Assembly: GCF_006345805.1 (NCBI RefSeq)
Contig: NW_021833778.1
Coordinates: forward strand, 1-55,102
Length of the DNA: 55,102 nt
Origin: Octopus sinensis
Lineage: Eukaryota
Direction of reading: 5' to 3'
The position numbers and the translations under genes were made by a program. Position 1 is the stretch's first letter. Each line of letters starts with the position of its first letter. The notes under the pieces were generated by a model, which saw only the letters and a list, made by a program, of their open reading frames with translations, did no database searches and was not told where the DNA came from. Of this stretch, positions 7,563 through 52,808 are shown in pieces.

Positions 7563-8972
7563 AACTTCCCTCGATGTCTGCTCGTGACTACATAAAACAA
7601 TTAGCGAAAGCTAATACAATTATATATACTACCAAATTATACTCACTCAAAGTAAAGGCTGGCTATATTGTACTTCAGGTGATTAATGTACCAAAGGGAG
7701 AATGTGTCTTGGTAGAGAGAGAGAGAGAGAGAGAGAGAGACGGTAATGAACTGTGAGGGTAACTCAGAATTTGTAGTGTGGGTCTAAGAATATCCTGTCA
7801 ACGCAATATTGTGATTTGGAAAGAAATTTGACGAGTTAAGCACAAATAATTTACATAGGATGTGTGAATACTGCATGTAAATATTTGTTGAGAATACATA
7901 ACTTGCTCTTGCTGGTTTTGTTTATCCATATATCATTCTTTTGCAACATGTTATAGATCTCTCTCTCTCTCTTCAAAATATTAACTTATTCTTTGCTTCT
8001 CAATCCTCGAGATATTTGTTGATTCTGTAGAATTTTATTGTCTGTGACTGCTCATCAGGAGTCAGGGTTGATGGCGGTCATTTTCAATTCACGCTTGCAC
8101 ACATTCTTGTATATCTCATTTACCTCTGGACCTAGAAGTCAGTATACTACAGAGCAAGCTTTTGAAATACAGCCATCATCCATAAGATGAACATGTCCAA
8201 AGCATCGAAGTCGTTGCTGGAAATGAAAAGTGAACATTGGGATGCCTGCTCTGGTATGTCAGTGTCACAGACATTGTCCTATTATTTGAGCCTAAGGATT
8301 CTACCCAGATTTCATAGGAAGTATATGATGTTTATGTTCTTGTGAAGAGTACGTCAACTACAATTTGTTGCTACAGAGAAATGTGCCGAGAACACAGGCC
8401 TTATACACCACAACAGTATCATATGTTCTGAGCAATTTATTCTCTCATAGTTTCTGGGTAAGTCATGAGCGAGTAGTAACTGCTTTGCCTATACATTTCT
8501 TAAGCTCGATTCAGGCAAACTGTAACAGGATGTTGAAGCGCTTGTACTATGCCCAGTAATACAACTCTATTTTAATGTTAAAACGTATCGGATTGCTTTG
8601 TCCCATGACTTCGGTCGTCTTGAGATTGTTTGTGAGACCAAAGAACTCACAAGTTCTTGAGATCACATTGCTCGTGGTGACCAACAACATATATCTCGTG
8701 ATAACATTCCTCATCTTAGAGTTGATCTAGCTATATTGAAGAGCCGATCGTAAATAAAGCACGGGACTTGAATGCAGGTTCAGGAGCAGCTCTCTCTCTC
8801 TCTCACACACACACACATTGTCAGAGCGAAGACACATCCTTGCTTGCCTCTACTCATTCAGTATTCCTGGGAAATAGATCCCTCATTCTGTCCAGTGCTC
8901 TTTATTCTGTTATGGAAAGACGTTAGGTGGGCAACTAATGTGTGATAATACCAGCCGTGTTAGACAGTGAAT

Positions 8973-9201
8973 ATCTATTTCTTTACTACCCACAAGGGGC
9001 TAAACACAGAGGGGACAAACAAGGACAGACAAAGGGATTAAGTCGATTATATCGAACCCTAGTGCGTAACTGGTACTTAATTTATCGACCCCGAGAGGAT
9101 GAAAGGCAAAGTCGACCTCGGCGGAATTTGAACTCAGAACGTAACGACAGACGAAATACGGCTACGCATTTCGCCCGGCGTGCTAACATTCTGCCAGCTC
9201 G
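8973..9201 (-). mobile_element. tRNA-derived SINE, family A, full-length with 3' tail
   Basis: GAGCTGGCAGAA..TTAGCACGCCGGGCG head, GGTCGACTTTGCCTTTCATCC core, tail TTGTCCCCTCTGTGTTTAGCCCCTTGTGGGTAGTAAAGAAATA. Many homologous copies in the window. Confidence 0.85.
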
Positions 9202-9716
9202 TATCTAGTAACAAATACACCTCCGCTAAAAGCATTGTTCGCTGCAATCCTGTACACCACTCACACGACTCCCTAAACATTTCATATTTTAAGGACTACA
9301 GTAGTAGTAGTGGTGGTGATGGTGACAATTTCGGCAACTGTTCAGAAAAATTATTTCCAATTTCTGGTTCGTTGACAATAATTAAAACAATAAATGAAAT
9401 TTGCAATCTCTCAGAGTTATCTATCTTGAGTTCAGATACTTGGCACCCATAGTTACTTCCCTTTTATATTGAGTGCCGACAAGACACGGTTATACATCTT
9501 TTATTTTAGTCATTAGACGGCGACCATGCTGGGCCGGGCACCTCCTTGAAGACTTTTATAGCAGAATAAAGCGACTCCAGTACTTATTGTTTTACAGTTT
9601 GGTACTTATTCTATCGGTACTTTTGCTGAACCGCAAAGTTACGGGGACGAAAACACACTAACACTTGTTGTCAAGCAGTGTGTGTGTGTGCGGACTAATA
9701 CACACACATACACTCA

Positions 9717-20992: not shown

Positions 20993-21230
20993 ATTTCTTT
21001 ATTTTTTTATTGCCCACAAGGGACTAAACATAGAGGGCACAAACAAGGAGAGACAAACGGATTAAGTCGATTATATCGACCCCAGTGCATAACTGGTACT
21101 TAATTTATCGACCCCAAAAGGATGAAAGGCAAAGTCAACCTCATCGGAATTTGAATTCAGAACGCAGTGGCGGACGAAATACCGCAAAGCATTTCGCCCG
21201 ACATGCTAACGTTTCTGCCAGCTCACCACC
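20993..21230 (-). mobile_element. Family A SINE, full-length with 3' tail
   Basis: Tail reads TTGTGCCCTCTATGTTTAGTCCCTTGTGGGCAATAA on the minus strand. Confidence 0.85.
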
Positions 21231-21271
21231 TAATCGCTAAATGTCCATCACAAGATGTCCTTGTTGCCAAT

Positions 21272-23844: not shown

Positions 23845-23927
23845 GGTCCCGGGTTGATTCGGGGTTAACCACAGTAAATAAGGTACTCAATACATAGCAG
23901 AGTAAAATTAATTTATTATATAGAAGG

Positions 23928-23978
23928 AGCTTCTACAGGACTAGAACTGTTTCATTCAAGAGAAATCTTCAGGAAGCT
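23928..23978 (-). ncRNA. Type I hammerhead ribozyme motif in a Penelope-like tail
   Basis: AGCUUC-CUGAAGA-uUUC(UCUU)GAAu-GAA-ACAG(uucuaguc)CUGU-A-GAAGCU: stem I 6 bp, stem III 4 bp, GUA cleavage triplet; stem II has a U-U closing mismatch. Confidence 0.7.
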
Positions 23979-24202
23979 AGTTAACAAGAATTGTATTGGC
24001 ATTTATACATTTAGGCAGGTTTAGGGTGGTGGTGGTGGACTTTTTGGGGGTAGGCATAGCGCAAAATATCATACTTGGGGGAGTGGTCAAGGAGTCAGTG
24101 GTAAATTAGATAAAAGAATAAATAAAAGAATAAAAAAATATATGAAAGAATAGAGTTTTAGGTAAATAAGGAGATTCTCACTTATACCTATACACATATG
24201 TA

Positions 24203-24234
<32 letters not shown>

Positions 24235-24253
24235 TATACATACACACATACAT

Positions 24254-24284
<31 letters not shown>

Positions 24285-24329
24285 CACATACATACATATA
24301 TCTACACACATATATACATATATATATAT

Positions 24330-24372
<43 letters not shown>

Positions 24373-24950
24373 ATATACACACATACATACATGCATACAC
24401 ATATACACACACACATGTATATATACACACACGACCACACATACATATACACACATAAAAATATATACATACACACGCATACACATACACGCATACACAC
24501 ACATATATATCCACATACACACATGCACACACAACACACAAGGCCCTATATACACATATATACACATATACATATATGTATATATATATGTATATACACA
24601 TATATGTATATATATGTATATGTGGGTATGTGTATATATGTGTATATTGATTAATAGTTGATCTCATGTAGAAGTCAAGCCCCTATTTTGGGCCAAAATA
24701 TTGGGAATTTTCTGTAGACCCCGTATAAAAGATGACCCTAGTATTTCATGATATGTGTATATGTGGGTATGTGTATATATGTGTATATAGGGACTTGTGT
24801 GTTGTGTGTGCATGTGTGTATGTGGATATATGTGTGTGTATGCGTGTATGTGTATGCGTGTGTATGTATATATTTTTATGTGTGTATATGTATGTGTGGT
24901 CGTGTGTGTATATATACATGTGTGTGTGTATATGTGTATGCATGTATGTA

Positions 24951-25000
<50 letters not shown>

Positions 25001-25354
25001 ATATGGATATATATATATATATGTATATATGTGTGTAGATATATGTATGTATGTGTATGTGTATATATATATATGTGTGTGTGTGTATGTATGTGTGTAT
25101 GTATATGTGTGTGTGTGTATATATGTATACATATGTGTATAGGTATAAGTGAGAATCTCCTTATTTACCTAAAACTCTATTCTTTCATATATTTTTTTAT
25201 TCTTTTATTTATTCTTTTATCTAATTTACCACTGACTCCTTGACCACTCCCCCAAGTATGATATTTTGCGCTATGCCTACCCCCAAAAAGTCCCCCACCA
25301 CCACCCCTTTAAACCTGCCTAAATGTATAAATGCCAATACAATTCTTGTTAACT

Positions 25355-25405
25355 AGTTTCCTGAAGATTTCTCTTGAATGAAACAGTTCTAGTCCTGTAG
25401 AAGCT
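25355..25405 (+). ncRNA. Type I hammerhead ribozyme motif (inverted copy of 23928-23978)
   Basis: AGUUUC-CUGAAGA...GAAACAG...CUGUA-GAAGCU; the C>U change in stem I keeps pairing as a G-U wobble. Confidence 0.68.
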
Positions 25406-25419
25406 CCTTCTATATAATA

Positions 25420-25460
<41 letters not shown>

Positions 25461-28000: not shown

Positions 28001-28088
28001 AAATTCACCTACCTATATATATGTATATGTGGTACACACACACACACACACATATATAAACATGCGTGTGTATATATGAATATATATA

Positions 28089-28316
28089 TTTCTTTACTAC
28101 CCACAAGGGGCTAAACACAGAGGGGACAAACAAGGACAGACAGAGGGATTAAGTCGATTACATCGACCCCAGTGCGCAACTGGTACTTAATTTATCGACC
28201 CCGAAAGGATGAAAGGCAAAGTCGACCTCGGCGGAATTTGAACTCGGAACGTAACAACAGACAAAATACGGCTACGCATGTCGCCCGGCATGCTAACGTT
28301 TCTGCCAGCTCGCCGC

Positions 28317-32903: not shown

Positions 32904-32918
32904 AAGAGCTAACAATTC
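32904..32918 (+). repeat. Left target-site duplication of Tx1 element 1
   Basis: AAGAGCTAACAATTC matches AAGAGCTAACAAGTC at 38317-38331 (14/15). Confidence 0.8.
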
Positions 32919-33107
32919 AATTTAATTGATGTCTGATTTTTCCCATATTTGAAGCGTGGTTTTTTCAGTAATTTGTAAGTAACTGTTTAGTGTTTGTTAC
33001 AGAAACTGTTGTTTTGTTTGAACTTTTGAACGTCTGGTGTAATAACAAAAGATATTGTTATTCCCCTCCTTACGGAGGGGAAAAGTGCTACACGTTGCAT
33101 ACAAAAC

Positions 33108-33147
<40 letters not shown>

Positions 33148-33200
33148 CACTACATTTGTGGAAAAAAATGAACAAAAAAGACATGAAGTCAAAAAAAAAA

Positions 33201-34682
33201 ATGTTGTTTGATGTGGAAACACTGTCCGCTTCAAGTGACGAAGGTTCGCCTTCAAGTGAAGCAGGTTTGCCTGCAGTTAAAGTCATCGAAGGTTCGCCTT
33301 CAAGTGTAGCTGTGTCTGCAGCTAAAATTATTAAAGGTTCGCCTTCGAAAGCTAAAACATACAACTTCGCAGCCACCGCCGGACGGAAGACGGAAGAGAT
33401 AAAGATGGAGGACATAGAATATGAAAAATACAAAACTATGTATGTAAGGGAGGGGAATAATATAAAAGCCACCCTCCCAGAAGAAATTAAAAATGAAACA
33501 CAGAGAAGGATTGTGAGTTACAAATCCTTTTTAATAAAAGAAAAAAAAAATCGAAAGAGTAACAAAGGAACAAGCAGAGAAGTGTCTGCAACCAATATAG
33601 CAAGACATAGACTGTGTGACATGGGGCAAAAAGTACGCCACAATAGTGGTATATTTCAAGAGCGAACAAATGGCAAGAAAGCACTCGATAACCCCAATTA
33701 AGGCGAGTGACATTGTTCTTTTGCCTTCCTATTTGGGGCGGCGGTCCGCCAAAATAAGGGTCGAGGACATACCGCCAGAAATCGAGGCGGAGTGGTTGCT
33801 TCCAGCCTTACTAATGGGGCTGGAAGAAAAAATAAGTGTGATAGCGATAACAAAGGTCAGGATGGAGAATTGGAGAGGTCAATCTCTTCAAGTGACAGTA
33901 CAGGCGGCCCCAGAGACGTTGGAGGAGGTGGCAGAAAATATCAATTTCAGCGATGAAATAAATTTGCGGGTGGTGGTGGAGGAGCGAAAGCCTCGATGCT
34001 ACGGATGTGGTGAGAAAGGCCACATCCGTATAGACTGCCCCACCCGCAAGAAATAAGAAGAGAGAAAAAGGATGGAAGCAGAGGAGAAGAGGAAAAAAGA
34101 GACGGTGGAAGAGAAAACAACAGAAGAAGAAAATGCCTTCACACTGGTGAGGCAGAAAAAAACACCAAAAAGAAAAAATGAAGACTTGAACCCACCCACC
34201 CCATGCACAAGCAAAAAGAAAAATAACACACAGGGGGGGAAATTTACCCCACCCAACCACGGTTCCCCACAAAAGAAAAAAAAAGAGAAGACCCCCCCAA
34301 CCCAACCCGAACAACCACCCCACCCCCACCTCCCAGTATCGAACAATTCCCTCCCCTCCCAAACTACTCCCCGCCGTCCCCCCCATCACCCCCACAAAGC
34401 CCAAAGAAAAAAATGGAAGGATTAGAGATGGTGTACATCTCAATAAACAATGATAACGATAGGTTGGTGAAACTTATTAATGAAGTCCCAACAGCAGAAA
34501 AAATACAAACTTACAGGGTATTGCCCAAAAATGTAGAAGTGAGTAAAATCGACAGATTAAATTACAACATTATACATGAGGAATACCCAAAAGACATCAG
34601 AGGTCCGCGTCTCGACTTGCACGAGTCGTTGTATAATGCGGACTTCCCCCCACGACAAACGGAAAAAAGGAAAACCAACTAA
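33201..34682 (+). pseudogene. Element 1 ORF1 (RRM-like region, CX2CX4HX4C knuckle), frameshifted
   Basis: Pieces 33156-33701, 33616-34056, 34072-34425 and 34413-34682; CYGCGEKGHIRIDC. Several shifts fall at or near A/C homopolymers. Confidence 0.85.
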
Positions 34683-34692
34683 AAGGTAGGTG

Positions 34693-37600
34693 ATGGCTCG
34701 TATTCATGTAGGGTGCATAAATGTGCATGGCCTGGTGACGAACTGGAAGCAAGGGCGCCTCCTAAATGACATCAGGTCACGGGATTTAGATGTTGTTGTT
34801 GCCACAGAAACCTGGTTAAAGGGGCCAAGAGATCCACTCCCGCTGTTCAGCGGTTTTGAGAGAATTATCTCTCCGAGCCGTCTGTCCGGCGGAAGCGGGG
34901 TGTTGGTCCTGTGTAAAAAGAACCAGGTTTCTGAGAAAAAGTTGATTTTTTCAGATCCAGAAGGTAGACTGGTCGTCGTTGATTTGATGTTCAGTAGTCG
35001 TAAGACAATCAGGCTGGTTGCGGTTTACGCACCCCACAGTCAAGGGGAACAAAGTGATTATTTTCGGAACCTTGGAAAGTTTCTGAGTACATCGCATCCT
35101 TTAGTTGTTTTAGGAGACTTCAACACAGTCTACGATGTGCGGGTAGACTGTGAGGGCTCGCGAACAGATAGGAAAGGAAATGCTTGCTTCCAGGATCTAC
35201 TAAGACGTTTCGAGCTGGTAGATCCATATAGACTGGAACATCCGAACGCTCCATTGTGGACATGGTCAAATAGCGACGGATCTATCAAGTCATACATAGA
35301 CAGGATATTAATTAGAAAAGTAGATAAGAAACTAGCTAGGAGTCCACATGCTCCACATGGTCAGCTACAGTGACCACAAGATGGTCACCTGTAGGCTAGA
35401 CATAGATAAGACGAATAGAGGTCCTGGTTACTGGAAACTTAATACGTCCCTTTTGGCGATTAAGGAGTACAGTGACAAGATGAGGTTAATGATTCAGAGG
35501 GCTTTGACTGGAACCATAATTAACAACAAATGGTGGTATGCCCTCAAGCGAGCCATCAGATATGAGTCCATTAGATATAGTATAGATCTAGTAGCTAGAG
35601 AGGCTAGAAGGGAATCAGCACTAGTTAAGGACTTAGAGGAAGCAATGCGAACTGGCACGGCAGCCCAGGTGAGGGTCAAGAGACTGGTTTTGAACCAGCA
35701 CCTTGAAGCCAAACACATGGGTTGCATTGTCAGGGCTAGACAACGTGCAATGGGGAGCGAAGGAATTAATGCCGCAAGATGGGCCCGAGTGGTGGAAGCC
35801 CAACGTGGCAACGATGCCACAATTCGATCTTTGACGAACCAACAAGGTAAGTTGATAGACGAGCCCGAGGAGATGTGTGAGGCTTTTCAGGACCACTTCG
35901 CCCGGCTCTTTGGGGGGAGCGGCAGACCGGATAGGAGGAGGGGCCTAACGGACCTCCTCCGACGGGCTGCCGCACCTCTCGGAGCAGGACGCGAAGTGTA
36001 GTGAGGAGCCGATCACGCCTGGGGAAGTAATAGAGGCCATGGCTGACTGCGGCACGGGTAAGGCACCAGGACTGGATGGTCTACCTTACGAGCTTTATAA
36101 AAGTATGCCGGACTTGTTCAGGGACTTACTGGTGAACGTCTACGCGAACTGGCAGCAGAATGGGTTTATTCCCAGATCTGTGCGCCGGGGAGTGGTGACA
36201 CCAATCAGGAAGGACTCGGACAAGGGGGATGTCATTGATAATTTTAGGCCCATCACTCTGCTTAACGCAGAGCTGAAGATTTTGGCCAAAGTGTTATCAA
36301 ACAGATTGGCGCGTGTCGCGGATGGACTAATAGGGAAGGCACAAACGTGTGCCGTACCTGGCAGGTCCATTCAGGATAATCTCCATCTAATTAGATACAG
36401 TATAGAGGGAATTAATAGCGATCCCGGCAAGGGAGGGGCAGTGGTCCATTTAGACCAATCAAAAGCTTTCGATAGGGTCGACCATCATTACCTGGTGTCT
36501 GTTCTGGCTCAGTTCGGCCTGGGTCTTGGCTTCCTCAGGTGGATCATCGAAATGTACGATAACGTCGACTCGGTAGTTCGGGTGAACGGCTTTATTTCTA
36601 AGCTGTTCAGAGTCAAATGCTCGGTTCGTCAAGGATGCCCACTCTCCCCGCTTTTGTATGTAGTGGCTCTCGAGCCACTGCTGCGAAAACTGAGTGGTAT
36701 CCCGAGGCAGCCAGGTCGTGGAATGTCGGTTTCGGCGTACGCGGATGACATCACTATCATCGTGACTGAAGTGGACCTCCTACGTAAAGTAGGCAAGGCC
36801 ATAGAGGTTTACGAGACGGTGACAGGAGCAAAAGTTAATCGCGAAAAGTCAGTCGGCTTGCAGCTCGGCACCTGGAGAGGCAAGTCGATGCCTTCAGACA
36901 GCGTCGTGGGACGTTGGACGGAGGGTCCGATTAAGTTGCTCGGGGTTTGGTTCGGACCAGACCTCCAAATAGAGAAGAACTGGAGCGAGGTATCGAGCAG
37001 GGTGGCTGCAGTAGCCAAGACCTGGTCTTGGCGGTGGTTATCCCTGAAAGGTAGGGCGGAGGTAGCCAATGTGTTCATCGCATCGGTGATCACCTACCGC
37101 CTTACCGTTGTGCCTTGCCCGGATTCGTGGTTGACCAAGTTGGAAAGACAGCTTTTCACTTTTTGTGGAAGAGCTCGAAACCACTTGTGAGACGCTCTGT
37201 TTGTTGTCAAAAACTGTTAAAGGGTGGACTAGGGATGCCGTGGCTAATGATGCGCAGAAATGCGCTGAGGTTAAGGCATCTGTGGCTCCATCTGGATGGT
37301 GAACGGGTGTGGTCTCCGTTGGCGAAACAGATGTTTCCCAATTTCACCAGTTTTGGTGGACGGGAAGCCTGGTATAATCACAGATCGAAGTTGGATACAT
37401 GGTATACGGAATGTCGCAAGGCACTCCGACTATTCCGTCGCTCGGGCAATGCCTGCGGCAGTGGTTCTACCGCTGTTTTCTATAGAGGGTTTGTAGAGGC
37501 CGGTTGCGATGATACATTAGGGGAAACCCTAGGTTTCGACGATAATCAGCTGGCCAGTCTGTTCCAACGTACATTTGGGCCGAGGACCCTGGATAATTTT

Positions 37601-38089
37601 CAGAAGTCCTTAGCTTGGCAGTGCTACCAAGGAGCCTTACCTGTTCATGATAAACTCGCAAGGCACGGTGGCCAAGTCAGCCCGACCTGTCCGAGGTGTG
37701 GGCGAGACAGGGAAACCGTCTCGCACGCGGTTGTGCAGTGCTCGGAGGTGGCAGACATGTGGGTTTTTGCCGAACAACTGTTGTCAAGTGGAGGAAGAGT
37801 ACAGCTATCGACTGAATCCATTGTAAAAATTGACCCACCGGATTTCTTAACGAAAGAAGGTAAGAATTGTTTTCTCTCTGTGGTTTCAATTGCGAAACAG
37901 GCAGTATGGAAGACGAGGATGAAAGGGGTGATAGCAGGCAACTTCATCTCTGGTTCTAGTCTGATGGAATATTTTAAATTCCACCTAAAAAGACAAATAG
38001 AACTAGAGAGGAGGGGCCTGAGTAAGAAAGTGTTCGATGAAAGATGGAAGAATGTTGTGAGTAAAAGGACCCTCATGAATGCGAGGTAA
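34693..38089 (+). pseudogene. Element 1 ORF2 (APE endonuclease, reverse transcriptase, Zn finger), three frameshifts
   Basis: VGCINVHGL, ATETW, LGDFN, SYIDRI (APE); KAPGLDGL, NFRPITLLN, LDQSKAFDRVDH, RQGCPLSP, AYADD (RT); CPRCGRDRETVSHAVVQC. Confidence 0.95.
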
Positions 38090-38316
38090 GCCGGAAAAAA
38101 AAGAAGGAAAAAAACCTAAGATCAGTGTCGTGACGGGGTTCGTGGGGTCCGTAAGCCCGCCCCACTCCATCTGTGAAATTGTTTGTGTAAAAAATGTCCT
38201 ATCATCCGAATTATATATTCATTTGTAAATTTTTAATAGACCCCAACGCATATTCATGTAAAATCATTTGTGATGTTCTGTCTTTATATGTATAACCGTA
38301 TGGTGAATAAAGAAAT

Positions 38317-38343
38317 AAGAGCTAACAAGTCCAGTCTGTTATA
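38317..38343 (+). repeat. Junction: overlapping TSDs of elements 1 and 2
   Basis: AAGAGCTAACAAGTCCAGTCTGTTATA contains the right TSD of element 1 (38317-38331) and the left TSD of element 2 (38324-38343). Confidence 0.8.
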
Positions 38344-38579
38344 CACCAGTCTGTTTTGTCATTTGCTGTTTACTACCGGTTTGTGAATTTAACTATTGTT
38401 ACTTTGTTTTATATATTGTGTATTTTGTGTAAAAACTGTTATTAGCCTTCGCGCGAAGGCTACGTATTAAAATTCCCCCCCCACGGGGGAATTGTTTTGA
38501 AACAATTATTGTGAAACAGTTTAAAATATACACAAAAGGCTTGCGAAGCCAAAATCTTTTGAAGGCTTGTTAAAGCCAA

Positions 38580-39881
38580 TTGAAAAGGCTTGTAAAGCCA
38601 CATCCAGAGATAGAGACTCCTATCTCATATTCACCTGTATCAGGTGAAGAAAGTTCACCGGCGGTGACGCTGAAAATAGAAGAGGCCCCAGCGAAGAAGT
38701 TCACAGAAGTTGCAGGAAAAAAACAAAAAAAAATCAACACGGATAAGAGCAACTTAGAAAAGTATGAAGCACTTTTGAAAAAGGAAGGAAATGAAGTAAC
38801 AGTGGAATGAGACGTCAGAAAGACAGAAGAAGTAGAAAGAAAAAGGATTATCTACAAAACACACAATACAACGATGAAAAGCATTCAAAGAGTGGAGGAA
38901 AAAAAAAAAGAGAATTGTCTAAAGACAATATGGAAAGACATCACGTATATAAACCGTGGCAGAAAGTTTGGAACGGTTCAGGTGAGGTTCAGGACTGAGG
39001 AGATAGCCAAGAAGCTATCAACCAAACCTCTAAAAGCGGAGAATATAGTCCTCCTCCCCCAGTACATAGGCAGAAGGACCTCAAAAATATTAATAAAAAA
39101 TATTCCGCCAGAAGCGAACGCCACATGCCTAGTGGCAGCAGTGATGTTAGGCCTGGAGGACAAGATCACTATCCTCCAGGCTACAGTAGAAGAGGAGGGG
39201 TATTGACAAGGCCAATGCATCTCAATGGCGATACAGGCGGAGGTCCAAACGTTAGAAGAAATACCAGAGATATTGAGGATCAGCGAGGAGGAGAGGGTGC
39301 TAGTGTTTGTGGAGGGCAGAAAGCCGAGGTGCTTCGGCTGCAGTAAAAAGGGGCACGTAAGAGCGGAGTGCCAACCTAAACCGCAGGAAGCAGCACCGCC
39401 AGAAAAAGAAAAAACAGAAGAGAAAACAGAAGAGAAAACACCAGAAACTACAGAAACCAAAGAGGCAACAGAAACAACAAGTGGCGAAGAAAAGGAAAAA
39501 GAGGAGGGATGGTCAAAAATTACCAAAAAAAACCGGAAAACAGAAACCACCCCTCAGAAAGAGAGCCAAAAAAAGAGGAAAGAAGTGACAAATACATTTA
39601 TGGCCATTAAGGCTGCCAACAACAGGCTAATTAATGTTTTGGCAGCCATGGCCAAGGTGGAGAAAATTAAAAAAACAAAAGACTGTATTGTTTATAGAAT
39701 AGGCCGGAAGGATTACGGACGGATAAAATCCGAATTCTTTCACGACGTGGGCCCTCTGAGATTGGACATATCTCCATATTTATACGAGGGCCTGCGTCGG
39801 ACTCCCCCACGAGCTCAGGAAAAAAATAAAAGTGAAGAAGAAGACGAAAAACAAGTCGAACAAGTCGAACCACTGATATAA
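38580..39881 (+). pseudogene. Element 2 ORF1, disrupted
   Basis: Pieces 38580-38810, 38874-39206 and 39225-39881. TGA at 39204-39206 aligns to TGG (Trp) in element 1. CFGCSKKGHVRAEC knuckle. The start codon is uncertain. Confidence 0.85.
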
Positions 39882-39889
39882 GGTAAGTT

Positions 39890-42800
39890 ATGGATTGCAT
39901 TTATGTTGGTTGTTTAAATGTGCGCGGCCTGGGATCAAGCTGGAAGCAAGGTCGCTTCCTTAATGATATCAGGTCGTGTAATTTGGATGTTATTGTTGCT
40001 ACAGAAACCCGGTTAGAGGGGCCAAGAGGTCTACTCCCGCTGTTTGACGGCTACGAGAGTTTTTTCTCTCTGGCCAGTCCTACAGGCGGGGGTGGGGTGT
40101 TGGTCCTATTAAAAAGAAACCGGGCAGAAAAACCCGGTTTCTTTTTAATAGACCAACACCCCACCCCCGCCTGTAGGACTGGCCAGAGAGAAAAAACTCT
40201 CGTAGCCGTCAAACACGCAGTAGACCTCTTGGCCCCTCTAACCGGGTTTCTGTAGCAACAATAACATCCAAATTACGCGACCTGATATCATTAAGGAAGC
40301 GACCTTGCTTCCAGCTTGATCCCAGGCCGCGCACATTTAATTTTTTCAGACCCAGAAGGTAGGCTGGTCGTCATGGATTTGACGTTCAGTAACAGTAAAG
40401 TTATCAGACTGGTTGCAATTTACGCACCCAACCAAAAAGGGCAAAGTGATTATTTTCGAGAACTGGAAAACTTTCTTGGTACTTCGCATTCATTAGTTGT
40501 GCTAGGAGACTTTAACACAATTTGCAAAGCGGATGTAGATTGTGTTGGCTTGCGTCCAGATAGAAAAGGTAACATTGGCTTCCTGGAACTGCTAAGCCGC
40601 TTTGAGCTAGCAGATCCTTATAGGTTGGAATTTCCGAATGCTCCATTGTGGACATGGTCAAGCAGCGACGGATCTTCCAGGTCATACATAGATAGGATAC
40701 TAATTAGAAAAGTAGACAGAAAAATAGCTAAGTGTCCACAGTTTTACCTGGTCAGCTACAGTGATCATAAAATGGTCACCTGTAAGCTTGACATAGATAA
40801 GGTTAAAAATAGAGGCTCCGGTTACTGGAAACTTAATACATCCCTTTTGGCGATTAAGGAGTACAGAGACCGGATTAGGACTATAATTCAGAGGGCGCTA
40901 TCTGGTGCCATCATTAATAACAAATGGTGGTATGCCCTCAAGCGAGCCATCAAATTCGAGTCAATTAGATATAGCATAGGATTAGTGGCTAGAGAGGCTA
41001 GGAGGGAATCTACTCTAGTTAAGGAATTAGAGGAAGCCTTGAAAACTGGCTCTGCGGTTCAGGTGGCGGCTAAGAGACTGGCGTTAAACCAGCACCTCGA
41101 GGCCAAACACATGGGCTGCATTGTCAGGGCTAGGATCCGCGCAATGGGTTGTGAAGGAATCAACGCTGTGAGATGGGCCCGAGTGGTGGAAGCTCAGCAT
41201 GGTAATGACGCCACGATTCGATCTATGACGAACCAACAAGGTGAGTTGATAAACGAGCCCGAGGAGATGTGTGAGGCCTTTCAGGAGCACTTCGCTCAGC
41301 TTTTCGGTGAGTGCGGAGGACTGGATAGGAGGAGGGCCTTTAAGGACCTCCTCGACGGGCTGCCGCGCTTATCGGGGCGAGATGCGGAGGGCTGTGAAGG
41401 GCCAATCACGCCTGGGGAGGTGGTTGAGGCGATGGCGGACTGCTGCGCGGGCAAGGCGCCGGGTTTAGATGGTCTACCCTATGAGTTATATAAGAGTATG
41501 CCAGACTTGTTCGGGCACCTACTGGTGGAGGTCTATGCGAACTGGCAGCAGAACGGGTTCATACCCAGATCTGTGCGCTGGGGAGTAGTGACACTCGTCA
41601 GAAAGGACCCGAGCAAGGGGGTGTACATTGATAATTTCAGGCCCATCACTCTGCTAAACACAGAGTTGAAGATTTTGGTCAAAGTGTTATCGAAAAGATT
41701 GGCGCGTGTCGCGGATGGTCTGATCGGGGAGGCACAGACATGTGCCGTTCCCGGCAGAACCATTCAGGATAATCTCCATCTTATGCGGTACACTACAGAG
41801 GGGTTTAATAGTGATTCTGGCAAGGGTGGGGCACTGGTCCATTTAGACCAATCTAAAGCGTTCGATAGGGTCGACCATCGCTACCTGGTATCTGCCCTGG
41901 CACAGTTGGGGCTGGGCCTTGGCTTCCTCAGGTGGATTATCCAAATTTACGACAACATCGACTCGGTAGTTCGGGTGAACGGCTTCTTGTCGAAGCCGTT
42001 CAACATCAAACGCTCGGTTCGTCAAGGGTGTCCGCTCTCCCCGCTTTTGTACGTGATGGCTCTTGAGCCATTACTGCGAAAACTCAGCGGCATCTCGAGA
42101 CAGCCAGGTAGTGGAAAATCGGTGTCAGCGTACGCGGATGACATCACCATCATCGTAACCGAAATGGATCACCTACATAAAGTAGGCAAGGCCATAGAGG
42201 TTAACGAGATGGTGACAGGAGCAAAAGTTAATCGTGAAAAGTCAGTCGGCTTGCAACTCGGCACCTGGAGAGGCAAGTCGATGCCTCCTGACAGCATCGT
42301 GGGACGTTGGACGGAGGGTCCGATTAAGTTGCTAGGGGTTTGGTTCGGTCCAGACCTCCAAATAGAGAAGAATTGGGGTGAGGTATCGAGCAGGGTGGCT
42401 GCAGTAACCAAGACCTGGTCTTGGCGGTGGCTATCCCTGAAAGGGAGGGCAGAGGTAGCCAATGTGTTTATCGCATCGGTTATCACCTACCGCCTTTCCA
42501 TCGTTCCTTGCCCTGATTCGTGGTTGATCAAGTTGGAAAGACAGCTCTTCTACTTCTTGTGGAAGGGCGGGAAACCACTTGTGAAATGCTCTACTTGCTG
42601 TCAACAACCGTTAAAGGGTGGGCTAGGGATGCCTTGGCTGATGATGCGCAGACATGCGCTGAGGTTAAGACATCTGTGGCTCTACCTGGATGGTGAACGG
42701 GTGTGGTCTCCGCTAGCAAAACTGATGTTTCCCAAGTTCACTAGTTTCGGTGGATGGGAAACCTGGTTGAATCGTAGATCGAAACTAGGCACATGGTACA

Positions 42801-43326
42801 CGGAGTGTCGCAAGGCTCCCCTGCTATTCCGTCGCTCGGGCAACGCCTGCGGTGGGGGTTCCACCACATTCTTCTACCTGTTCGGGATAAACTCGCAAGG
42901 CACAGTGGCCAAGACAGTCCGATATGTCCAAGATGCGAGCGGGATAGGGAAACCGTCCCGCACGCTATTGTTCATTGTTCGGTTGTGTCTGAGGTGTGGG
43001 TTTATGCCGAACAGCTGTTGTCAAGCACACGAAGAGTACAGCTGTCGACTGAGTCTATTACAAAAATTGACCCACCAGATTTCCTTGCGAAAGAAGGTAA
43101 GAATTGTTTACTCGTTGTAGTAGCAATTGCGAAAGAGGTGATATGGAAGACGCGAATGAAAGGTTTACGGTCAGGCAAGTTCATATCCGGCCCTGGTTTG
43201 ATGAATTACTTCATCTTTCACCTGAAAAGGAAGATAAGGCTGGAGAGAAAATGCCTGTCTAAGAGAGTGTATGAAGAACGATGGAAAGATGTAGCACGAA
43301 AGTTGCGAGTGAATGATACCACATAA
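39890..43326 (+). pseudogene. Element 2 ORF2 (APE-RT-Zn finger), disrupted by a fold-back duplication and an internal deletion near 42870
   Basis: VGCLNVRGL, ATETR, LGDFN, SYIDRI, KAPGLDGL, LDQSKAFDRVDH, QGCPLSP, AYADD, CPRCERDRETVPHAIVHC. Confidence 0.95.
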
Positions 43327-43562
43327 ATGTAAAACTAGACGAAACCAAAGTATCAGTGGGGAGGCGAGGCTCGTGGGGTCCGAGCTAAACCTGCTCCCAC
43401 TCCATCCGTAATGTCTTCCGGTCTGTTCTCCATTCGATTTTTTCTATTTTTGTAATTTTTGAAAATTTTAAAATTCGCCTTTTTTGTAAACCCATTCGTA
43501 TATCTGACCCCACATCAGATTGTATTGTCCCCTCTATGTTCGTCCCTTGTGGGTAATAATAA

Positions 43563-43582
43563 AACAATTCCAGTCTGTTATA
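43563..43582 (+). repeat. Right target-site duplication of Tx1 element 2
   Basis: AACAATTCCAGTCTGTTATA matches AACAAGTCCAGTCTGTTATA at 38324-38343 (19/20). Confidence 0.85.
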
Positions 43583-43747
43583 TATTTTGAGTATTGTTAT
43601 CACTAGCGATATCAAGATATAACTTTGTATTTTGCATTTTATGTGTAGATGTATATATATAGATGTACATGTAATATGTACACATATATATACACATATA
43701 TACATGCACTAGCACTATGACCCGGCAACGACGGGTCTTTAATGCTC

Positions 43748-43812
<65 letters not shown>

Positions 43813-43929
43813 TGAGTGGACATACAAAAGAAAGGGTACTCAACATTTATTTGGAGTTACATGCATTATTCAAAACTGTCTGAATCAAATTGTTTTAGAT
43901 ATATAATATATCGGACATCCCAAACATAC

Positions 43930-44770
43930 ATATTGGAGACCACAGATTACAAGAGGTGGAGAAGTTTACCTATCTGGGCTCTACCGTCACCTACAACCTA
44001 TCCCTTGACGCTGAGCTCAATATACGCATTGGCAAGGCAGCTGCTGCGATGGCCCAACTCTCCAAATGGGCTTGGGACAACAATAAGCTGACCAAGACCA
44101 CGAAAATGAAGATCTACCAGGCATGTGTACTCAGCACTCTACTGTATGGAAGGGAGACCTGGACGCTATACACACGCCAAGAGCGTCGCCTAAACATCTT
44201 TCACCTGCGCTGCCTTCGAAAATCCTCCGCATCAATGGCAGAATCATATCCCCAACAAAGATGTCCTCAGGCAAGCAGGAATACCAAGCATGTTTGCACT
44301 CCTCACACAAAGGACGTATGAGATGGCTTGGGCATGTTAGCCGTATGAAAGATGGCAGAATCCCCAAGGACATACTCTACGGAGAGCTTGCTAGGGGTAC
44401 TAGGTCTGTGGGTAGACCGATCTTACGTTACAAGGATGTTTGCAAAAGGGACATGAAGGCCTGCAACATCAATATTAGCGGTTGGGAGGCAGTTGCCGGC
44501 AACCGTGGAGAATGGCGACGTACCGTAAAAGTGGAATACAAAGGAGTGACAGAGAGAGAGAGGAGAAATGGAAAGAAAGGAAGAGACGTAAACAAGAGAC
44601 TATGGCACAACAACCAGCCAGGAACAGTCTTCGCTACATTTGCGGTACCTGCCAGAGGAGTGTTTGTCCAGGATAGGACTACACAGCCACAGCAGGAAAT
44701 GTATCAGGACATGAAATATAAAAGCCGGACTAGACTACTCATGCGCAACTCCATTGTCTCCCGAGACAGA
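43930..44770 (+). mobile_element. 5'-truncated RTE (BovB-like) LINE
   Basis: VEKFTYLGS, RIGKAAAA, VLSTLLYGRETW, RWLGHVSRM..RIPKDILYGEL..GRP..RYKD; 3' end ccattgtctcccgagacagaaaggatgcca then (TA)n. Confidence 0.9.
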
Positions 44771-44777
44771 AAGGATG

Positions 44778-44853
<76 letters not shown>

Positions 44854-45400
44854 GAGAGAGAGAGAGATTGTGTGTGTGTACGTAGGTATGTGTACATGTA
44901 TGTATTTATAAATTCACACGCATACATATGTATATATTTGTCTATATACATACATTTATGTTAGTGCAAAGCTCTCTCCACACCACCACCACCACCACCA
45001 ACAACAACAACGTCCCAATCTCAACCACTTCAAGACACACAAACCATAAATAGTCAGGTCAATGACATTTATATCAAATTACTCTCTGACATCATTGGGT
45101 TTGCTATGTTTACAATACACCATTGAACAACAGTAAAGTTATTTAAGGTAAAGAGAGCAAATGAATGGTTATATCCTGCATTAAATCCTAGTTTAATTCA
45201 CTTGTTGTTGCTAAGCTAAGGTCAGCCTGGATCCAACATTCTTTGAAAATATTCCATCAATGACCATCTTTTATTCAGACATAATGTATCTAGGACTTTG
45301 TAGAGTTGTTGTTTAACCATAGGAGGTCAATCCTGATGAAGCAAACCTATGATCAAAGTCATTCCAGCATGGCCTTTCTGTCTTTTAATTACAAACAGTG

Positions 45401-45530: not shown

Positions 45531-45581
45531 GTGTGTACATGTATGTAGTCTGTGCATGTGTGTATATATATATATATATAA

Positions 45582-47400
45582 TACTATTAAATGGAATAAA
45601 TGACAATATACAATTCACGACGGACCACAACGAAAAAGAATTACCATTTTTAGACATCCTCATTAAGAAAACTGGCAACAAAATAGAGACAGATATCTAC
45701 TATAAACCGACAGACTCTAAACAGTACCTAACCTTTGATTCATGCCACCCACGACACACTAGAATGAATGTCCCTTTTTGTTTAGCTAGAAGGATTTGCA
45801 CCATAATATCAGACACAAACACCCAACACACACGTCTCCAGGAACTTAGAACCACACTCACAAATAGAAACTATCCACAGCCCCTAATAGACAGTGCAAT
45901 CCAACGGGTACTTAAATTAAGTATAGAAGACCTGAGACAAACAAAACCAAAAAAGAAAGAACAATTAAAAACCCTTCCCTACATCTCTACACACAACCCA
46001 CTCAACAATGAGGCCTTCAACACCATACTACAAAGCACAGCCCTACTAAAGGAGACCCAAAGATGAACCGGATCCTCGAAACACACACCATCATTAAAAG
46101 TAAACGGCAACCAAAATCCTTGAAAAGGATTTTAACCCAAGCTACACTGCACTCAACATCAACCACAAAACCAGCAGTTAGAAAATGTGGAAGGCCCAAC
46201 TGCGGAATCTGTGTCATCTTGAAAGAAGGATCAGAATTTATACTGGAACAAGGCCACCAGTTCACCATTAGAACAAACTTCACCTGCGCATCAGAAAACT
46301 TAATTTACATCATAACATGCGCAGGCTGCAATAGGCAGTATATAGGCCATACAAAAAATAGCTTACGTAACAGGATGGCGGTGCATAAATCACAAATTAG
46401 AAACCTGATTACCGCAAAATACCGGTCAGCGGACACATAGATAGATGTGCTGGAAATGTAAATCCGAAATTTACAACTAACCCGCTCTATAAATTCAGTG
46501 ACAACGCAACCTTCACACAACGCCAAAATAAAGAACTATATTTCATAAAAAATTTAGACCAAGTTTAAACACCCTGGGCCAAGAATACTAAAACAAAAGA
46601 TAAGTTCTCCGAAAAGGAGAAGCAAAATTCCACCACGGCCGCTACTTTAAACAGACACTCGCTCTGACGGAAATATGCCTTAGTAAAAAAGGAAAAAAAT
46701 TCTTTCGTGCAAATCTGACCCTGATACATACGATACAACTAAGGGTCAGACCCGATTCTGATTGGTCAACAAGTTGATGACGTCTAGCTCTGCTAGAATG
46801 GACAGGATACAAACAGGGGACAGTCATTAGTCAGAATATTGATGACGTCCTTTTCTGCTTGACTAGTCACCTAACAAGTACAGACAGGGGGCAGATCTAA
46901 TGTAGCTATAAGTCGTGATTGGGCAGAATCTGGATGACGTCCTGTTCTGCTTGACTAACGAAGCGACTGGTCAAAACAGGAAACAAACAAGAGGCAGTTA
47001 TAATGCAGCGATTGGACAAAATAATGATGACGTCCCGTTCTGCTTGACTAAAGCCACCTAACGAAACGATTGGTCAAAACGTTGATGACGTCACGCTACG
47101 CTGGATTGACCACCTAACAGGCATTATAAAACCGAGCACTTCACAAAACCCACTAGAACCACCCAGCGAACATCCACCATGGGTCATCACAATTGCTTAA
47201 GGTAAAAATGAATTCCTCGCTCTTTCGGAAACATCAATCTTCTGTATTGACCGCTTTCCACCACTTTGATCTGTTTTTTGTATTGAATACGTATCGCCAC
47301 CGTGGGCCACTGCATCGAACACTTTGAACATATACTTCAAACTATATATCAACTATACATGAACTATATATCAACTATACATGAACTCTAAGATGTCTGA
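45582..47400 (+). mobile_element. 5'-truncated Penelope-like element (RT C-terminus, GIY-YIG endonuclease, pseudo-LTR)
   Basis: LPFLDILI, IYYKPTD, SCHPRH, LARRICTI, RNYP (PLE RT/thumb); CGRPNCGIC, TCASENLIYIITCAGCNRQYIGHT (GIY-YIG). Starts directly after (TA)n. Confidence 0.92.
46761..47131 (+). promoter_or_regulatory. Pol II promoter-like array: five (inverted CCAAT-N12-TGACGTC) modules plus TATAAAA
   Basis: ATTGG at 46761, 46918, 47011 and 47069 (ATTAG at 46826). TGACGTC at 46778, 46843, 46935, 47028 and 47086 (full TGACGTCA in the last). TATAAAA at 47125-47131. Confidence 0.65.
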
Positions 47401-52089: not shown

Positions 52090-52808
52090 CTGGTGGCAAA
52101 CTGGTAGAATAATTAGCATGCCGGACGTAATGCTTTGCAACATTTCACCAATCTTTACATTCTGAGTTCAAATTCTTCTGCTGAGGTTCACTTTGCCTTT
52201 CATCATTGCAGGGTCAGTGAAATAAGTACCAGCTGAGTATTGAGGCAGATGTAATCAAATTTCCCCTCCTTTCAAAAGCTGCTATTATTGGTTCTGGGCC
52301 AAAATTTGAAACCATTAATATGGTAGTGGTAGTGGATTAGCAAAAGTATCCAGCTCTTCAAAGTTCTAAAAAGGAGTAAAAGTAAAGCTGACCTTGGTGA
52401 GGTTTTACTTCAGAACATAAAGAGCCATAAGAAAGCATTTTGTCTAATATGCAAACGATTTTTCCAGCTGGCCACCTAAGTAATAATAATAATAATAATA
52501 ATTATAATAATAATAATAACAATAATAATAATAATAATAATAATGATGATAACAATAATAATACTAATAATAATAATTCTTTCTACGGGAAGTACAAGGC
52601 CTCAGATTTGGAGTAAGGGATTAACTTGATTACATTGGCTCCAGTGTGTAACTGGTACTTATTTAATTGACCCCAAAAGGATGAAAAGCAAAGTTGACCC
52701 TGGAGGAAGTTGAATTCAGAATGTAAAGACGGATGAAATGCCGCTGAGCATTTTGTCTGGTGACCTAACGATTCTCTTAGCTTGCTGACTTACAACTACT
52801 ACTACTAC

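What the first reader, a model, noticed from the sequence alone, without database searches (positions are those of the whole stretch)
32904..43582. Two different full-length Tx1 LINEs inserted independently into the same 27-bp site (overlapping TSDs)
Seen: the junctions read AAGAGCTAACAATTC | element 1 | AAGAGCTAACAAGTCCAGTCTGTTATA | element 2 | AACAATTCCAGTCTGTTATA. Removing both elements rebuilds one empty site, AAGAGCTAACAATTCCAGTCTGTTATA, with 15-bp and 20-bp TSDs that start 7 bp apart. The elements differ strongly in ORF1 and UTRs, so this is two insertion events, not a tandem duplication. Known: Tx1-group APE endonucleases are often sequence-specific (Xenopus Tx1L into the Tx1D DNA transposon; others into U2 snRNA, tRNA arrays or microsatellites). 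Inference: these may be a site-specific Tx1 lineage with a target I do not recognise. The alternative is ordinary A-rich (TT/AAAA-like) preference.
Basis: partly seen in the sequence, partly recalled or inferred. Interest (0 to 1): 0.85.

Follow-up and report, generated by a model that had tools for sequence, protein, structure and literature searches.

The report
Two LINEs inserted at one site
Two different, now-defective copies of one LINE retrotransposon family landed head-to-tail in the same 27-bp spot, a known "double insertion" that can seed tandem repeat arrays; it shows a target preference, not a strictly site-specific element.

Summary
The junctions are as described: AAGAGCTAACAATTC | E1 (32919-38316) | AAGAGCTAACAAgTCCAGTCTGTTATA | E2 (38344-43562) | AACAATTCCAGTCTGTTATA.

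E1 and E2 are structurally complete but frameshifted L1/Tx1-superfamily LINEs (APE endonuclease, RT, zf-RVT; ORF1 with a CCHC knuckle). ORF2 is 76-93% identical. The 5'UTR, ORF1 and 3' end are about 50% identical. The TSD copies differ at only 1 of 35 positions. So these are two separate insertions of already diverged subfamilies, not a diverged duplication.

This is a double-insertion tandem dimer, a known route (Drosophila R1 arrays; McGurk & Barbash 2018).

Strict site-specificity is not supported:
- the two bottom-strand nicks are 7 bp apart;
- the site holds no RNA gene and no repeat;
- three copies of a SINE sharing E2's 3' tail sit in unrelated flanks.

Some target preference is still implied. 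Distant relatives (41-43% aa) form head-to-tail arrays in two metagenome assemblies, and one array carries the same 14-bp TSD at its junctions and its right flank.

Unexplained: E2's 5' end repeats 10 nt of the target (5/20000 by chance). The downstream flank aligns with E2's 5'UTR as well as E1's does, so it may be a third-copy stub.

Tx1-versus-L1 placement could not be tested.

The parts
32904..32918 (+). Left TSD copy of E1 (AAGAGCTAACAATTC), positions 1-15 of the rebuilt 27-bp site
   Evidence: The exact 12-mer occurs only here and at 38317.
32919..38316 (+). E1, a structurally complete but defective L1/Tx1-superfamily LINE. 5'UTR about 32919-33155, with hairpin 33061-33082 and an internal A/(TA)n tract at 33105-33150. 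ORF1 fragments 33156-34425, with the CCHC knuckle in 33616-34056. ORF2 fragments 34690-38089 (endonuclease, RT, zf-RVT). 3'UTR 38090-38316, ending ...GGTGAATAAAGAAAT.
   Evidence: ORFs, Pfam, frames 2/3/1/3.
38317..38343 (+). Middle 27-mer AAGAGCTAACAAGTCCAGTCTGTTATA. It is the right TSD copy of E1 (38317-38331) overlapping the left TSD copy of E2 (38324-38343). It has one substitution (G at 38329) relative to both outer copies.
38344..43562 (+). E2, a second subfamily of the same LINE family. 5'UTR 38344-38873, starting CACCAGTCTGTT, with hairpins at 38443-38462 and 38471-38493. ORF1 fragments 38874-39881 (CCHC motif CFGCSKKGHVRAEC). ORF2 39890-43326, interrupted by the inverted duplication. 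3'UTR 43327-43562, ending ...CCCTTGTGGGTAATAATAAA.
40133..40340 (-). Inverted copy (97% identical) of E2's own 39914-40124, lying inside the endonuclease coding region
43563..43582 (+). Right TSD copy of E2 (AACAATTCCAGTCTGTTATA), positions 8-27 of the rebuilt site
43570..43740 (+). Downstream flank. It may be the 5' stub of an older third copy (E3). It begins with CCAGTCTGTT, the same 10-mer found in E2's first 13 nt.
   Evidence: The 10-mer is shared with E2's 5' end in 5/20000 random segments. The anchored alignment with E2's 5'UTR scores 14, reached by 0.3-1% of nulls, versus 9 for E1 against E2. An unanchored local test is not significant.
38112..38175 (+). Conserved G+C-rich 3'UTR block of E1. 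Its counterpart in E2 is at about 43342-43410.
   Evidence: Local alignment score 57 against shuffles of 18.4 +/- 2.3, reached by 0/500.
8971..9215 (-). SINE copy whose 3' tail (...TTGTCCCCTCTGTGTTTAGCCCCTTGTGGGTAGTAAAGAAATA) matches E2's 3' tail. Its 3' flank is GATATTCACTG...
21000..21231 (-). SINE copy with the same tail. Its likely TSD is GGACAT(C/T)TAGC, unrelated to the 27-mer.
28082..28312 (-). SINE copy with the same tail, inserted in a (TA)n tract

Best explanation
Two already diverged subfamilies of one L1/Tx1-superfamily LINE inserted separately, by target-primed reverse transcription, into the same short stretch of unique A+T-rich DNA.

Shown:
- Each insertion duplicated its own staggered-cut interval, positions 1-15 for E1 and 8-27 for E2.
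- The intervals overlap, so the middle junction holds the whole 27-mer.
- Either order of insertion gives the observed arrangement.

Inferred:
- The endonuclease has a real but loose sequence or structure preference.
- A TSD leaves an intact copy of the preferred site on both sides of the first element, so that spot stays a good target for the next copy.

This is the 'double insertion' route to tandem TE dimers. Such dimers can later expand into arrays by unequal exchange. The family does not depend on this 27-mer: it also mobilises a SINE through a shared 3' tail, into unrelated sites.
For: 1. The junctions and TSDs are exact and non-random.
2. Both elements have Exo_endo_phos + RVT_1 + zf-RVT. 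E1's ORF1 has a zf-CCHC hit. ORF2 aligns along most of its length with human L1 ORF2p (E = 5e-59).
3. Divergence is uneven: ORF2 76-93%, the rest about 50%, ORF1 45% aa. The TSD copies differ at 1/35 positions (P = 0.017 under 16% divergence).
4. E2's last ~40 nt match the tails of three SINE copies whose flanks are unrelated to the 27-mer.
5. There is no tRNA or Rfam gene, and the rebuilt empty site has no repeat structure.
6. Relatives at 41-43% aa identity do the same thing:
   - tandem arrays in ERZ21867824, with period 6821 bp at 99.9% identity (L002/L003) and period about 6440 bp at 98.3-99.4% identity (L088, L090);
   - a TARA scaffold with a 55-bp terminal overlap, meaning a collapsed tandem (L005);
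   - in L090 the 14 nt GCAGACTAGAAGGT follow every copy's 3' end and also start the array's right flank, after which the sequences diverge, so a TSD is kept at the junction;
   - a solitary full-length relative with a 17-bp TSD (L087).
7. McGurk & Barbash 2018 (PMC5932611) describe this signature: the target site is preserved in the tandem junction. They report it for non-LTR elements without strict specificity, such as jockey. They argue that dimers need only a motif preference plus TSDs.
Against: - No other LINE copies of these two subfamilies could be examined, so the preferred motif is undefined. The host genome is not in the collections: the best protein hit is 58% identical and the DNA scans were empty.
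- That the SINE is moved by this LINE family is inferred from tail similarity only.
- The 10-nt identity between the target and E2's 5' end is not predicted by simple double insertion.
- Shared target motifs among relatives are weak (about 0.04 per pair).
Confidence: 0.75

Rival explanations
1. Homing to the 5' end of a resident copy. The downstream flank (from 43570) is the 5' stub of an older third element, E3. E2 and then E1 each inserted at or just upstream of a resident copy's 5' terminus, so the array grew from its 5' side. The 27-mer would be 15 nt of host DNA plus the first 12 nt of E3. This is a special case of double insertion, not its opposite.
For: - CCAGTCTGTT is shared by the target and E2's first 13 nt (5/20000).
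- The downstream flank, anchored at that motif, aligns with E2's 5'UTR at score 14 (0.3-1% of nulls). The true homologues E1 and E2 score 9.
- GTCTG lies within the first 20 nt of E1, E2 and the L090 unit.
- E1's 5' junction falls exactly before CAGTCTG.
- Relatives build head-to-tail arrays.
Against: - The unanchored local test is not significant (58/500).
- No ORF1 or ORF2 remnant lies downstream.
- At the right end of the L090 array the flank after the TSD is unrelated to the 5'UTR.
- In relatives, the flanks downstream of solitary copies show no 5'UTR similarity.
- The motif was chosen after seeing the data.
Confidence: 0.2
2. A strictly site-specific lineage of the Tx1L, Keno or R1 type. 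The 27-mer would belong to a multicopy target, such as another transposon. E2's 5' CCAGTCTGTT would be target sequence carried along by co-transcription, as with the U1/U2-derived heads of some Tx1-Mar families.
For: - Two subfamilies hit the same 27 bp.
- The target-like 10-mer lies at E2's 5' end.
- Many Tx1 families prefer specific transposons, and their copies and partner SINEs pile up in one target (Kojima 2015, PMC4494074).
Against: - The nick positions differ by 7 and 12 bp.
- The SINE copies sharing E2's tail lie in unrelated flanks.
- The 27-mer and its flanks occur nowhere else in the 55-kb window, and the site has no TIR or repeat structure.
- No small RNA gene is present.
- Solitary relatives sit in differing flanks.
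Confidence: 0.08
3. One insertion was duplicated in tandem by unequal exchange at the TSD, and the copies then diverged or were partly converted.
For: The elements are head-to-tail, in the same orientation and of similar length. Arrays of relatives do expand this way.
Against: - It predicts identical TSD extents at all three junctions. Instead the left copy lacks positions 16-27 and the right copy lacks positions 1-7.
- Divergence is very uneven, and the TSDs are nearly identical (P = 0.017).
- ORF1 proteins are only 45% identical.
Confidence: 0.03
4. An assembly artefact joined two LINE copies from different loci.
For: Repeats of 5 kb are a common source of misjoins. The window also holds a 100% identical local duplication at 17307-18255.
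Against: A misjoin would not create three junctions that rebuild one continuous 27-mer with nested TSDs. The two elements are too different (84% in ORF2) to be collapsed.
Confidence: 0.03

Closest known systems
Double-insertion tandem TE dimers (McGurk & Barbash 2018, Genome Res, PMC5932611); Drosophila R1 tandem array with 33-nt rDNA duplications between copies
   Same: The elements are head-to-tail and the junction keeps a copy of the target site that also flanks the dimer. The two insertions are independent: in jockey dimers this shows as distinct 5' truncations, here as distinct subfamilies. Dimers can expand by unequal exchange, as seen in the relatives' arrays L002, L088 and L090.
   Different: Here the two TSDs are offset (15 and 20 bp, starting 7 bp apart) and not identical. 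The partners are two subfamilies about 16% apart in ORF2, and both are full-length. R1 is strictly rDNA-specific, and this family is not shown to be.
Target-preferring Tx1-clade LINEs: Tx1L in Tx1D (piggyBac-type); Tx1-Mar with SINEU in Mariner-N4_AMi; Keno in U2 snRNA genes (Kojima 2015, PMC4494074)
   Same: APE-type LINE with a CCHC-containing ORF1. It has a partner SINE. Several insertions pile up at one target. The 5' end resembles target sequence, compare the U1/U2-derived heads of Tx1-Mar families.
   Different: No multicopy target was identified, the nick positions are not fixed, and partner SINE copies lie in unrelated sequence. Clade placement by RT phylogeny was not done.
Stringent-type LINE/SINE pairs sharing a 3' tail (eel UnaL2/UnaSINE1, Kajikawa & Okada 2002, as cited in PMC4494074)
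   Same: E2's last ~40 nt are shared with a SINE (about 88% over 41 nt). There is no poly(A) tail. The 3'UTR has a conserved block and ends in an A-rich AATAAA-like sequence.
   Different: Mobilisation was not tested. The terminal hairpin is strong in the relatives (z = -2 to -5) but weak in E1, E2 and the SINE.
Human LINE-1 ORF2p (PDB 8sxt, 8uw3, 9hdo)
   Same: E2 ORF2 residues 11-791 align with residues 91-891 of L1 ORF2p, covering the endonuclease and RT (E = 5e-59).
   Different: ORF1 is of the CCHC-knuckle type, not Transposase_22. There is no poly(A) tail, and a zf-RVT C-terminal domain is present.

Membership tests
Double-insertion tandem TE dimer | Two elements head-to-tail in the same orientation | tested here: met
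   E1 at 32919-38316 and E2 at 38344-43562, both on the + strand.
Double-insertion tandem TE dimer | The junction between the elements holds a copy of the target site that also flanks the dimer | tested here: met
   The middle 27-mer equals the left 15-mer plus the right 20-mer with an 8-bp overlap. There is 1 mismatch.
Double-insertion tandem TE dimer | The two copies are independent insertions, not a duplication | tested here: met
   Uneven identity of 48-93%, ORF1 45% aa, offset TSDs, and TSD divergence of 1/35 (P = 0.017).
L1 superfamily (L1/Tx1 group) of non-LTR retrotransposons | ORF2 with an N-terminal APE-type endonuclease, an RT and a C-terminal Cys/His domain | tested here: met
   PF03372, PF00078 and PF13966 in both elements. 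Alignment with human L1 ORF2p at E = 5e-59.
Tx1 clade | The RT domain groups with Tx1 reference elements and not with L1 (RTclass1 or Repbase phylogeny) | not testable with these tools
   No named Tx1 reference sequences are held.
Tx1 clade | ORF1 of the RRM/zf-CCHC kind (Type I variants in animals are described as consistent with Tx1; PMC5203782) | tested here: met
   zf-CCHC in E1 ORF1. E2 ORF1 has CFGCSKKGHVRAEC. This is consistent with Tx1 but not diagnostic.
Strictly site-specific non-LTR elements (R1, R2, Tx1L, Keno type) | All copies sit in one target sequence at a fixed nucleotide position | tested here: not met
   The nicks of E1 and E2 are 7 bp (bottom strand) and 12 bp (top strand) apart. 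Three SINE copies with E2's tail lie in unrelated flanks. Caveat: no further LINE copies were available.
Strictly site-specific non-LTR elements (R1, R2, Tx1L, Keno type) | The target is a multicopy gene, microsatellite or transposon | tested here: inconclusive
   No Rfam or tRNA hit. The rebuilt site has no TIR or repeat and no second copy in the window. Genome-wide copy number is unknown.
Stringent LINE-SINE partnership | The SINE's 3' tail is homologous to the LINE's 3' tail | tested here: met
   E2 43525-43564 matches the SINE tails at 21002-21042 (88% over 41 nt). 16-nt matches (one exact, two 15/16) lie in three other SINE copies.

The most novel reading that the evidence does not exclude
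This LINE lineage may build head-to-tail arrays by inserting at the 5' terminus of resident copies. Under this reading the window shows three successive insertions (E3 stub, then E2, then E1), each landing within about 15 nt of the previous copy's 5' end. Homology between the incoming element's 5' end and the target (CCAGTCTGTT) would help complete full-length insertion. The large TSD-bearing arrays in relatives at 41-43% identity would then be the expanded products of a conserved property.
Probability: 0.2. Interest if true: 0.6.

Novelty: new member of a known kind. Interest (0 to 1): 0.35.

Why it matters
This is a clean, base-resolved case of how a dispersed LINE becomes a tandem repeat. 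Two full-length copies of different subfamilies share one site, and their nested TSDs record both staggered cuts.

Combined with the relatives' arrays of several 6.4-6.8 kb units, which keep a TSD at each junction, it suggests this L1/Tx1-type lineage repeatedly seeds satellite-like arrays.

It also identifies a LINE/SINE pair with a shared 3' tail. Given the source genome, that pair would allow the family's target preference to be measured from thousands of insertions.

It does not reveal a new class of site-specific element.

Tried and rejected
1. Are the flanks of the dimer element ends? Unanchored local alignments of the upstream and downstream flanks against the 3' and 5' ends of E1 and E2 were not significant. 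Only the anchored test on the downstream flank was.
2. Is 'AAGAGCTAACAA(T/G)TC' the real 3' terminus of the elements, with a common nick before CAGTCTG? Rejected. The SINE tails end at ...AAAGAAATA and are followed by unrelated sequence.
3. Is there a small RNA gene or tRNA target? None in the window or in L002.
4. Is the empty site part of a transposon or other repeat? It has no TIRs and no second copy in the window.
5. More copies from public data:
   - the best protein hit is only 58% identical;
   - SINE-tail and SINE-core scans of genome contigs and viral contigs gave nothing;
   - 80 more distant relatives from JGI metagenomes (about 30% aa identity) show no tandem arrangement or terminal overlap.
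6. Do relatives share a target motif (G-CAG-N-CTAG)? L087/L090 and L090/L004 reach only about 0.04 per pair, and the other pairs are random. I treat this as a weak hint.
7. Do flanks downstream of solitary relatives resemble 5'UTRs? No.
8. Is a 3'-terminal hairpin a family signature? It is strong in the relatives but not significant in E1, E2 or the SINE.
9. Naming the organism or the hits: no names or accessions in the clusters, and no paper cites GCA_024449705.
10. A noisy blastn-short run without the low-complexity filter was used only for its 3'UTR hits.

Full report
**Observation.**
- 32904-32918 reads AAGAGCTAACAATTC and is followed by a 5398-bp element, E1 (32919-38316).
- 38317-38343 reads AAGAGCTAACAAGTCCAGTCTGTTATA and is followed by a 5219-bp element, E2 (38344-43562).
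- 43563-43582 reads AACAATTCCAGTCTGTTATA.

The exact 12-mer AAGAGCTAACAA and the exact 14-mer TCCAGTCTGTTATA each occur twice in the 55-kb window, always at an element border. For the 14-mer, 0.01 matches are expected by chance even when one mismatch is allowed. The middle copy has one substitution (G for T). The 3' borders are uncertain by 1-2 nt because both tails end in A-rich sequence. Removing both elements rebuilds AAGAGCTAACAATTCCAGTCTGTTATA.

**What the elements are.** Both carry ORF2 with Exo_endo_phos, RVT_1 and zf-RVT. E1's ORF1 has a zf-CCHC hit, and E2's ORF1 has the same CX2CX4HX4C motif. E2 ORF2 residues 11-791 align with residues 91-891 of human L1 ORF2p (E = 5e-59). So they belong to the L1 superfamily.

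A CCHC-type ORF1 in an animal element is described as consistent with the Tx1 clade (PMC5203782). Placement of the RT against Tx1 references could not be done here.

Neither element has a poly(A) tail. They end in ...GGTGAATAAAGAAAT (E1) and ...CCCTTGTGGGTAATAATAAA (E2).

Both are dead.
- E1's ORF2 is read in frames 2, 3, 1 and 3.
- E2 carries a 211-bp inverted duplication of its own endonuclease start (39914-40124 against 40133-40340, 97% identical). It also lacks about 156 bp that E1 has, and it shifts frame near 42835-42913.
- ORF1 is split in both.

**Two events, not a duplication.** A global alignment gives 48-55% identity over the 5'UTR and ORF1, 76-93% over ORF2 and 45-61% over the 3' end. 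The ORF1 proteins are 45% identical. The 3'UTRs share one conserved G+C-rich block.

The TSD copies differ at 1 of 35 compared positions. At 16% divergence, the probability of at most 1 difference is 0.017. Duplication by unequal exchange would also give TSD copies of equal extent at all three junctions, which is not seen. The two elements therefore arrived as already different subfamilies. Either order of insertion produces the observed arrangement.

**Is the lineage site-specific?** The evidence is against strict specificity.
- The two bottom-strand nicks are 7 bp apart and the two top-strand nicks 12 bp apart.
- The window has no tRNA or Rfam gene.
- The rebuilt empty site has no terminal inverted repeats, and neither it nor its flanks recur in the window.

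The most useful test came from an unplanned finding. E2's last ~40 nt are shared with a SINE present several times in the window. The head of this SINE looks tRNA-like by eye, but ARAGORN calls no tRNA in it.
- E2 43525-43564 matches 21042-21002 at 88% over 41 nt.
- 16-nt matches (one exact, two 15/16) lie in three other SINE copies (alignment).
- The three copies with intact tails (8971-9215, 21000-21231, 28082-28312, all minus strand) end in ...CCCTTGTGGGTAGTAAAGAAATA or a close variant.
- Their 3' flanks are GATATTCACTG..., a (TA)n tract, and GGACATCTAGC... (likely TSD GGACAT(C/T)TAGC).

This also shows that AAGAGCTAACAA is target sequence, not element tail. If the SINE uses this LINE's machinery (inferred from the shared tail), then the machinery inserts into many different sequences.

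**Why the same site twice?** Random insertion cannot plausibly put two full-length copies 7 bp apart, so some preference must exist. McGurk & Barbash (PMC5932611) documented this situation in Drosophila.
- Tandem dimers of non-LTR elements and DNA transposons arise by double insertion.
- The junction keeps the target site.
- This requires only that an element prefers certain motifs and makes TSDs, because an insertion preserves its target while generating a new one.
- They saw it for jockey, which is not strictly site-specific, and for R1.
- Dimers can expand into arrays by unequal exchange.

**Relatives support this reading.** The closest proteins are only 58% identical (a 3-kb contig of GCA_024449705.1) and then 41-43% identical.

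In assembly ERZ21867824 these relatives form head-to-tail arrays.
- One has period 6821 bp at 99.9% identity (L002/L003).
- Another has period about 6440 bp at 98.3-99.4% identity (L088, L090).

A TARA Oceans scaffold has a 55-bp terminal overlap, as expected for a collapsed tandem of period 6619 bp (L005).

L090 contains the right end of an array. After every copy's 3' end (...AGAAATAAA) come the 14 nt GCAGACTAGAAGGT. These are followed either by the next copy's 5' end or, after the last copy, by unrelated flank. So the junctions keep a TSD, as expected for a double insertion that later expanded.

A solitary full-length relative (L087) has a 17-bp TSD, GTCAGTCTAGATCCAGA. TSDs in the lineage are therefore 14-20 bp long, matching the window. 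Eighty more distant relatives (about 30% identity) show no tandems.

A shared target motif among the relatives (G-CAG-N-CTAG) is only weakly supported, at about 0.04 for two of ten pairs.

**What remains unexplained.** E2's first 13 nt (CACCAGTCTGTTT) contain the same 10-mer, CCAGTCTGTT, as the end of its TSD. Only 5 of 20000 random window segments share a 10-mer with E2's 5' end.

The downstream flank, anchored at that motif, aligns with E2's 5'UTR at score 14 (reached by 0.3-1% of nulls). E1's 5'UTR scores 9 against E2's in the same test. An unanchored test is not significant.

Three readings remain open:
- (a) The flank is the 5' stub of an older third copy, and new copies home to resident 5' ends.
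- (b) The family's 5' end carries target-like sequence, as in some Tx1-Mar families with U1/U2-derived heads (PMC4494074).
- (c) The 12 nt are a re-copy of the target end made during 5' joining. This would parallel the AATTC-AATTT-AATTG run at E1's 5' junction.

I give (a) about 20%. The consensus 5' end of the E2 subfamily would decide between them.

**Verdict.** 'Two independent insertions with overlapping TSDs' is well supported. 'A site-specific Tx1 lineage with an unknown target' is not supported in its strict form, and the Tx1 label is untested.

The best description is a double-insertion tandem dimer of two subfamilies of an L1/Tx1-type LINE. The LINE has a stringent 3' tail, a partner SINE and a loose target preference.

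This is a new example of a known kind. It is of moderate interest as a well-resolved first step from dispersed LINE to tandem array. That interest is raised somewhat by the arrays in distant relatives and by the unexplained match between E2's 5' end and the target.

Noticed in passing
window 39914-40124 and 40133-40340: E2 holds a 211-bp inverted duplication of its own endonuclease-coding start. The arms are 97% identical and about 8 nt apart. ORF2 resumes after it with nothing lost. It looks like a foldback or twin-priming-like event.
   Followed up: partly
window 8971-9215, 17962-18159, 21000-21231, 28082-28312 (all minus strand): An abundant SINE with a head that looks tRNA-like by eye (B-box-like GAGTTCAAATTCCGCC; ARAGORN calls no tRNA). 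Its 3' tail matches the 3' tail of E2, and E1's end (AATAAAGAAAT) resembles the SINE end (GTAAAGAAATA). This suggests a LINE/SINE partnership.
   Followed up: partly
window 52615-52775 (-), 52918-53079 (-), 52101-52232 (+), 20292-20399 (-), 2340-2470 (+): Older SINE subfamilies share the same core but have different tails (...GGCCTTGTRCC...AGAAAGRATTATT). These tails resemble the 3' ends of the relatives in ERZ21867824 (...AAGGCCTTGTGCC...AGAAATAAA). This hints at a second partner LINE family in this genome and at a related host for that assembly.
   Followed up: no
L002/L003, L088, L090 (ENA ERZ21867824) and L005 (TARA scaffold, ERZ28663443): Relatives at 41-43% aa identity form long head-to-tail arrays of complete 6.4-6.8 kb LINEs. 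A 14-bp TSD (GCAGACTAGAAGGT) is kept at each junction of the L088/L090 array. The 3'-terminal hairpin shows compensatory changes between copies (CTGTGTA/TACACAG versus CTATGTA/TACATAG).
   Followed up: partly
window 38330-38385: CTGTT recurs three times with an exact 15-nt period across the junction between the TSD and E2's 5' end (CAGTCTGTTATACAC / CAGTCTGTTTTGTCA / TTTGCTGTTTACTAC). At E1's 5' junction, AATTC AATTT AATTG recurs (32914-32928).
   Followed up: partly
window 17307-17694 and 17839-18255: A 100% identical local duplication: 17436-17694 equals 17997-18255, and 17307-17432 is the exact reverse complement of 17839-17964. It may be a very recent rearrangement or an assembly artefact.
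   Followed up: no
window 23912-24585 and 24751-25421: An inverted repeat of about 680 bp, 95% identical, with arms about 165 bp apart. It could be a foldback or a long-TIR element.
   Followed up: no
window 13576-13916 and 15865-16194: A 341-bp direct repeat, 96% identical, with copies about 1.9 kb apart. It looks like an LTR pair.
   Followed up: no
window 43816-44911 and 45533-46440: Just downstream of the dimer lies a 5'-truncated fragment of a different LINE, flanked by (TA)n. Its ORF2 C-terminal region was recognised by eye only, with no Pfam hit. Next comes a fragment with a GIY-YIG domain (PF01541, E = 2.8e-6), typical of Penelope-like elements.
   Followed up: partly
window 33105-33150: E1's 5'UTR contains an A-run followed by a (TA)n microsatellite that has no counterpart in E2.
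   Followed up: no
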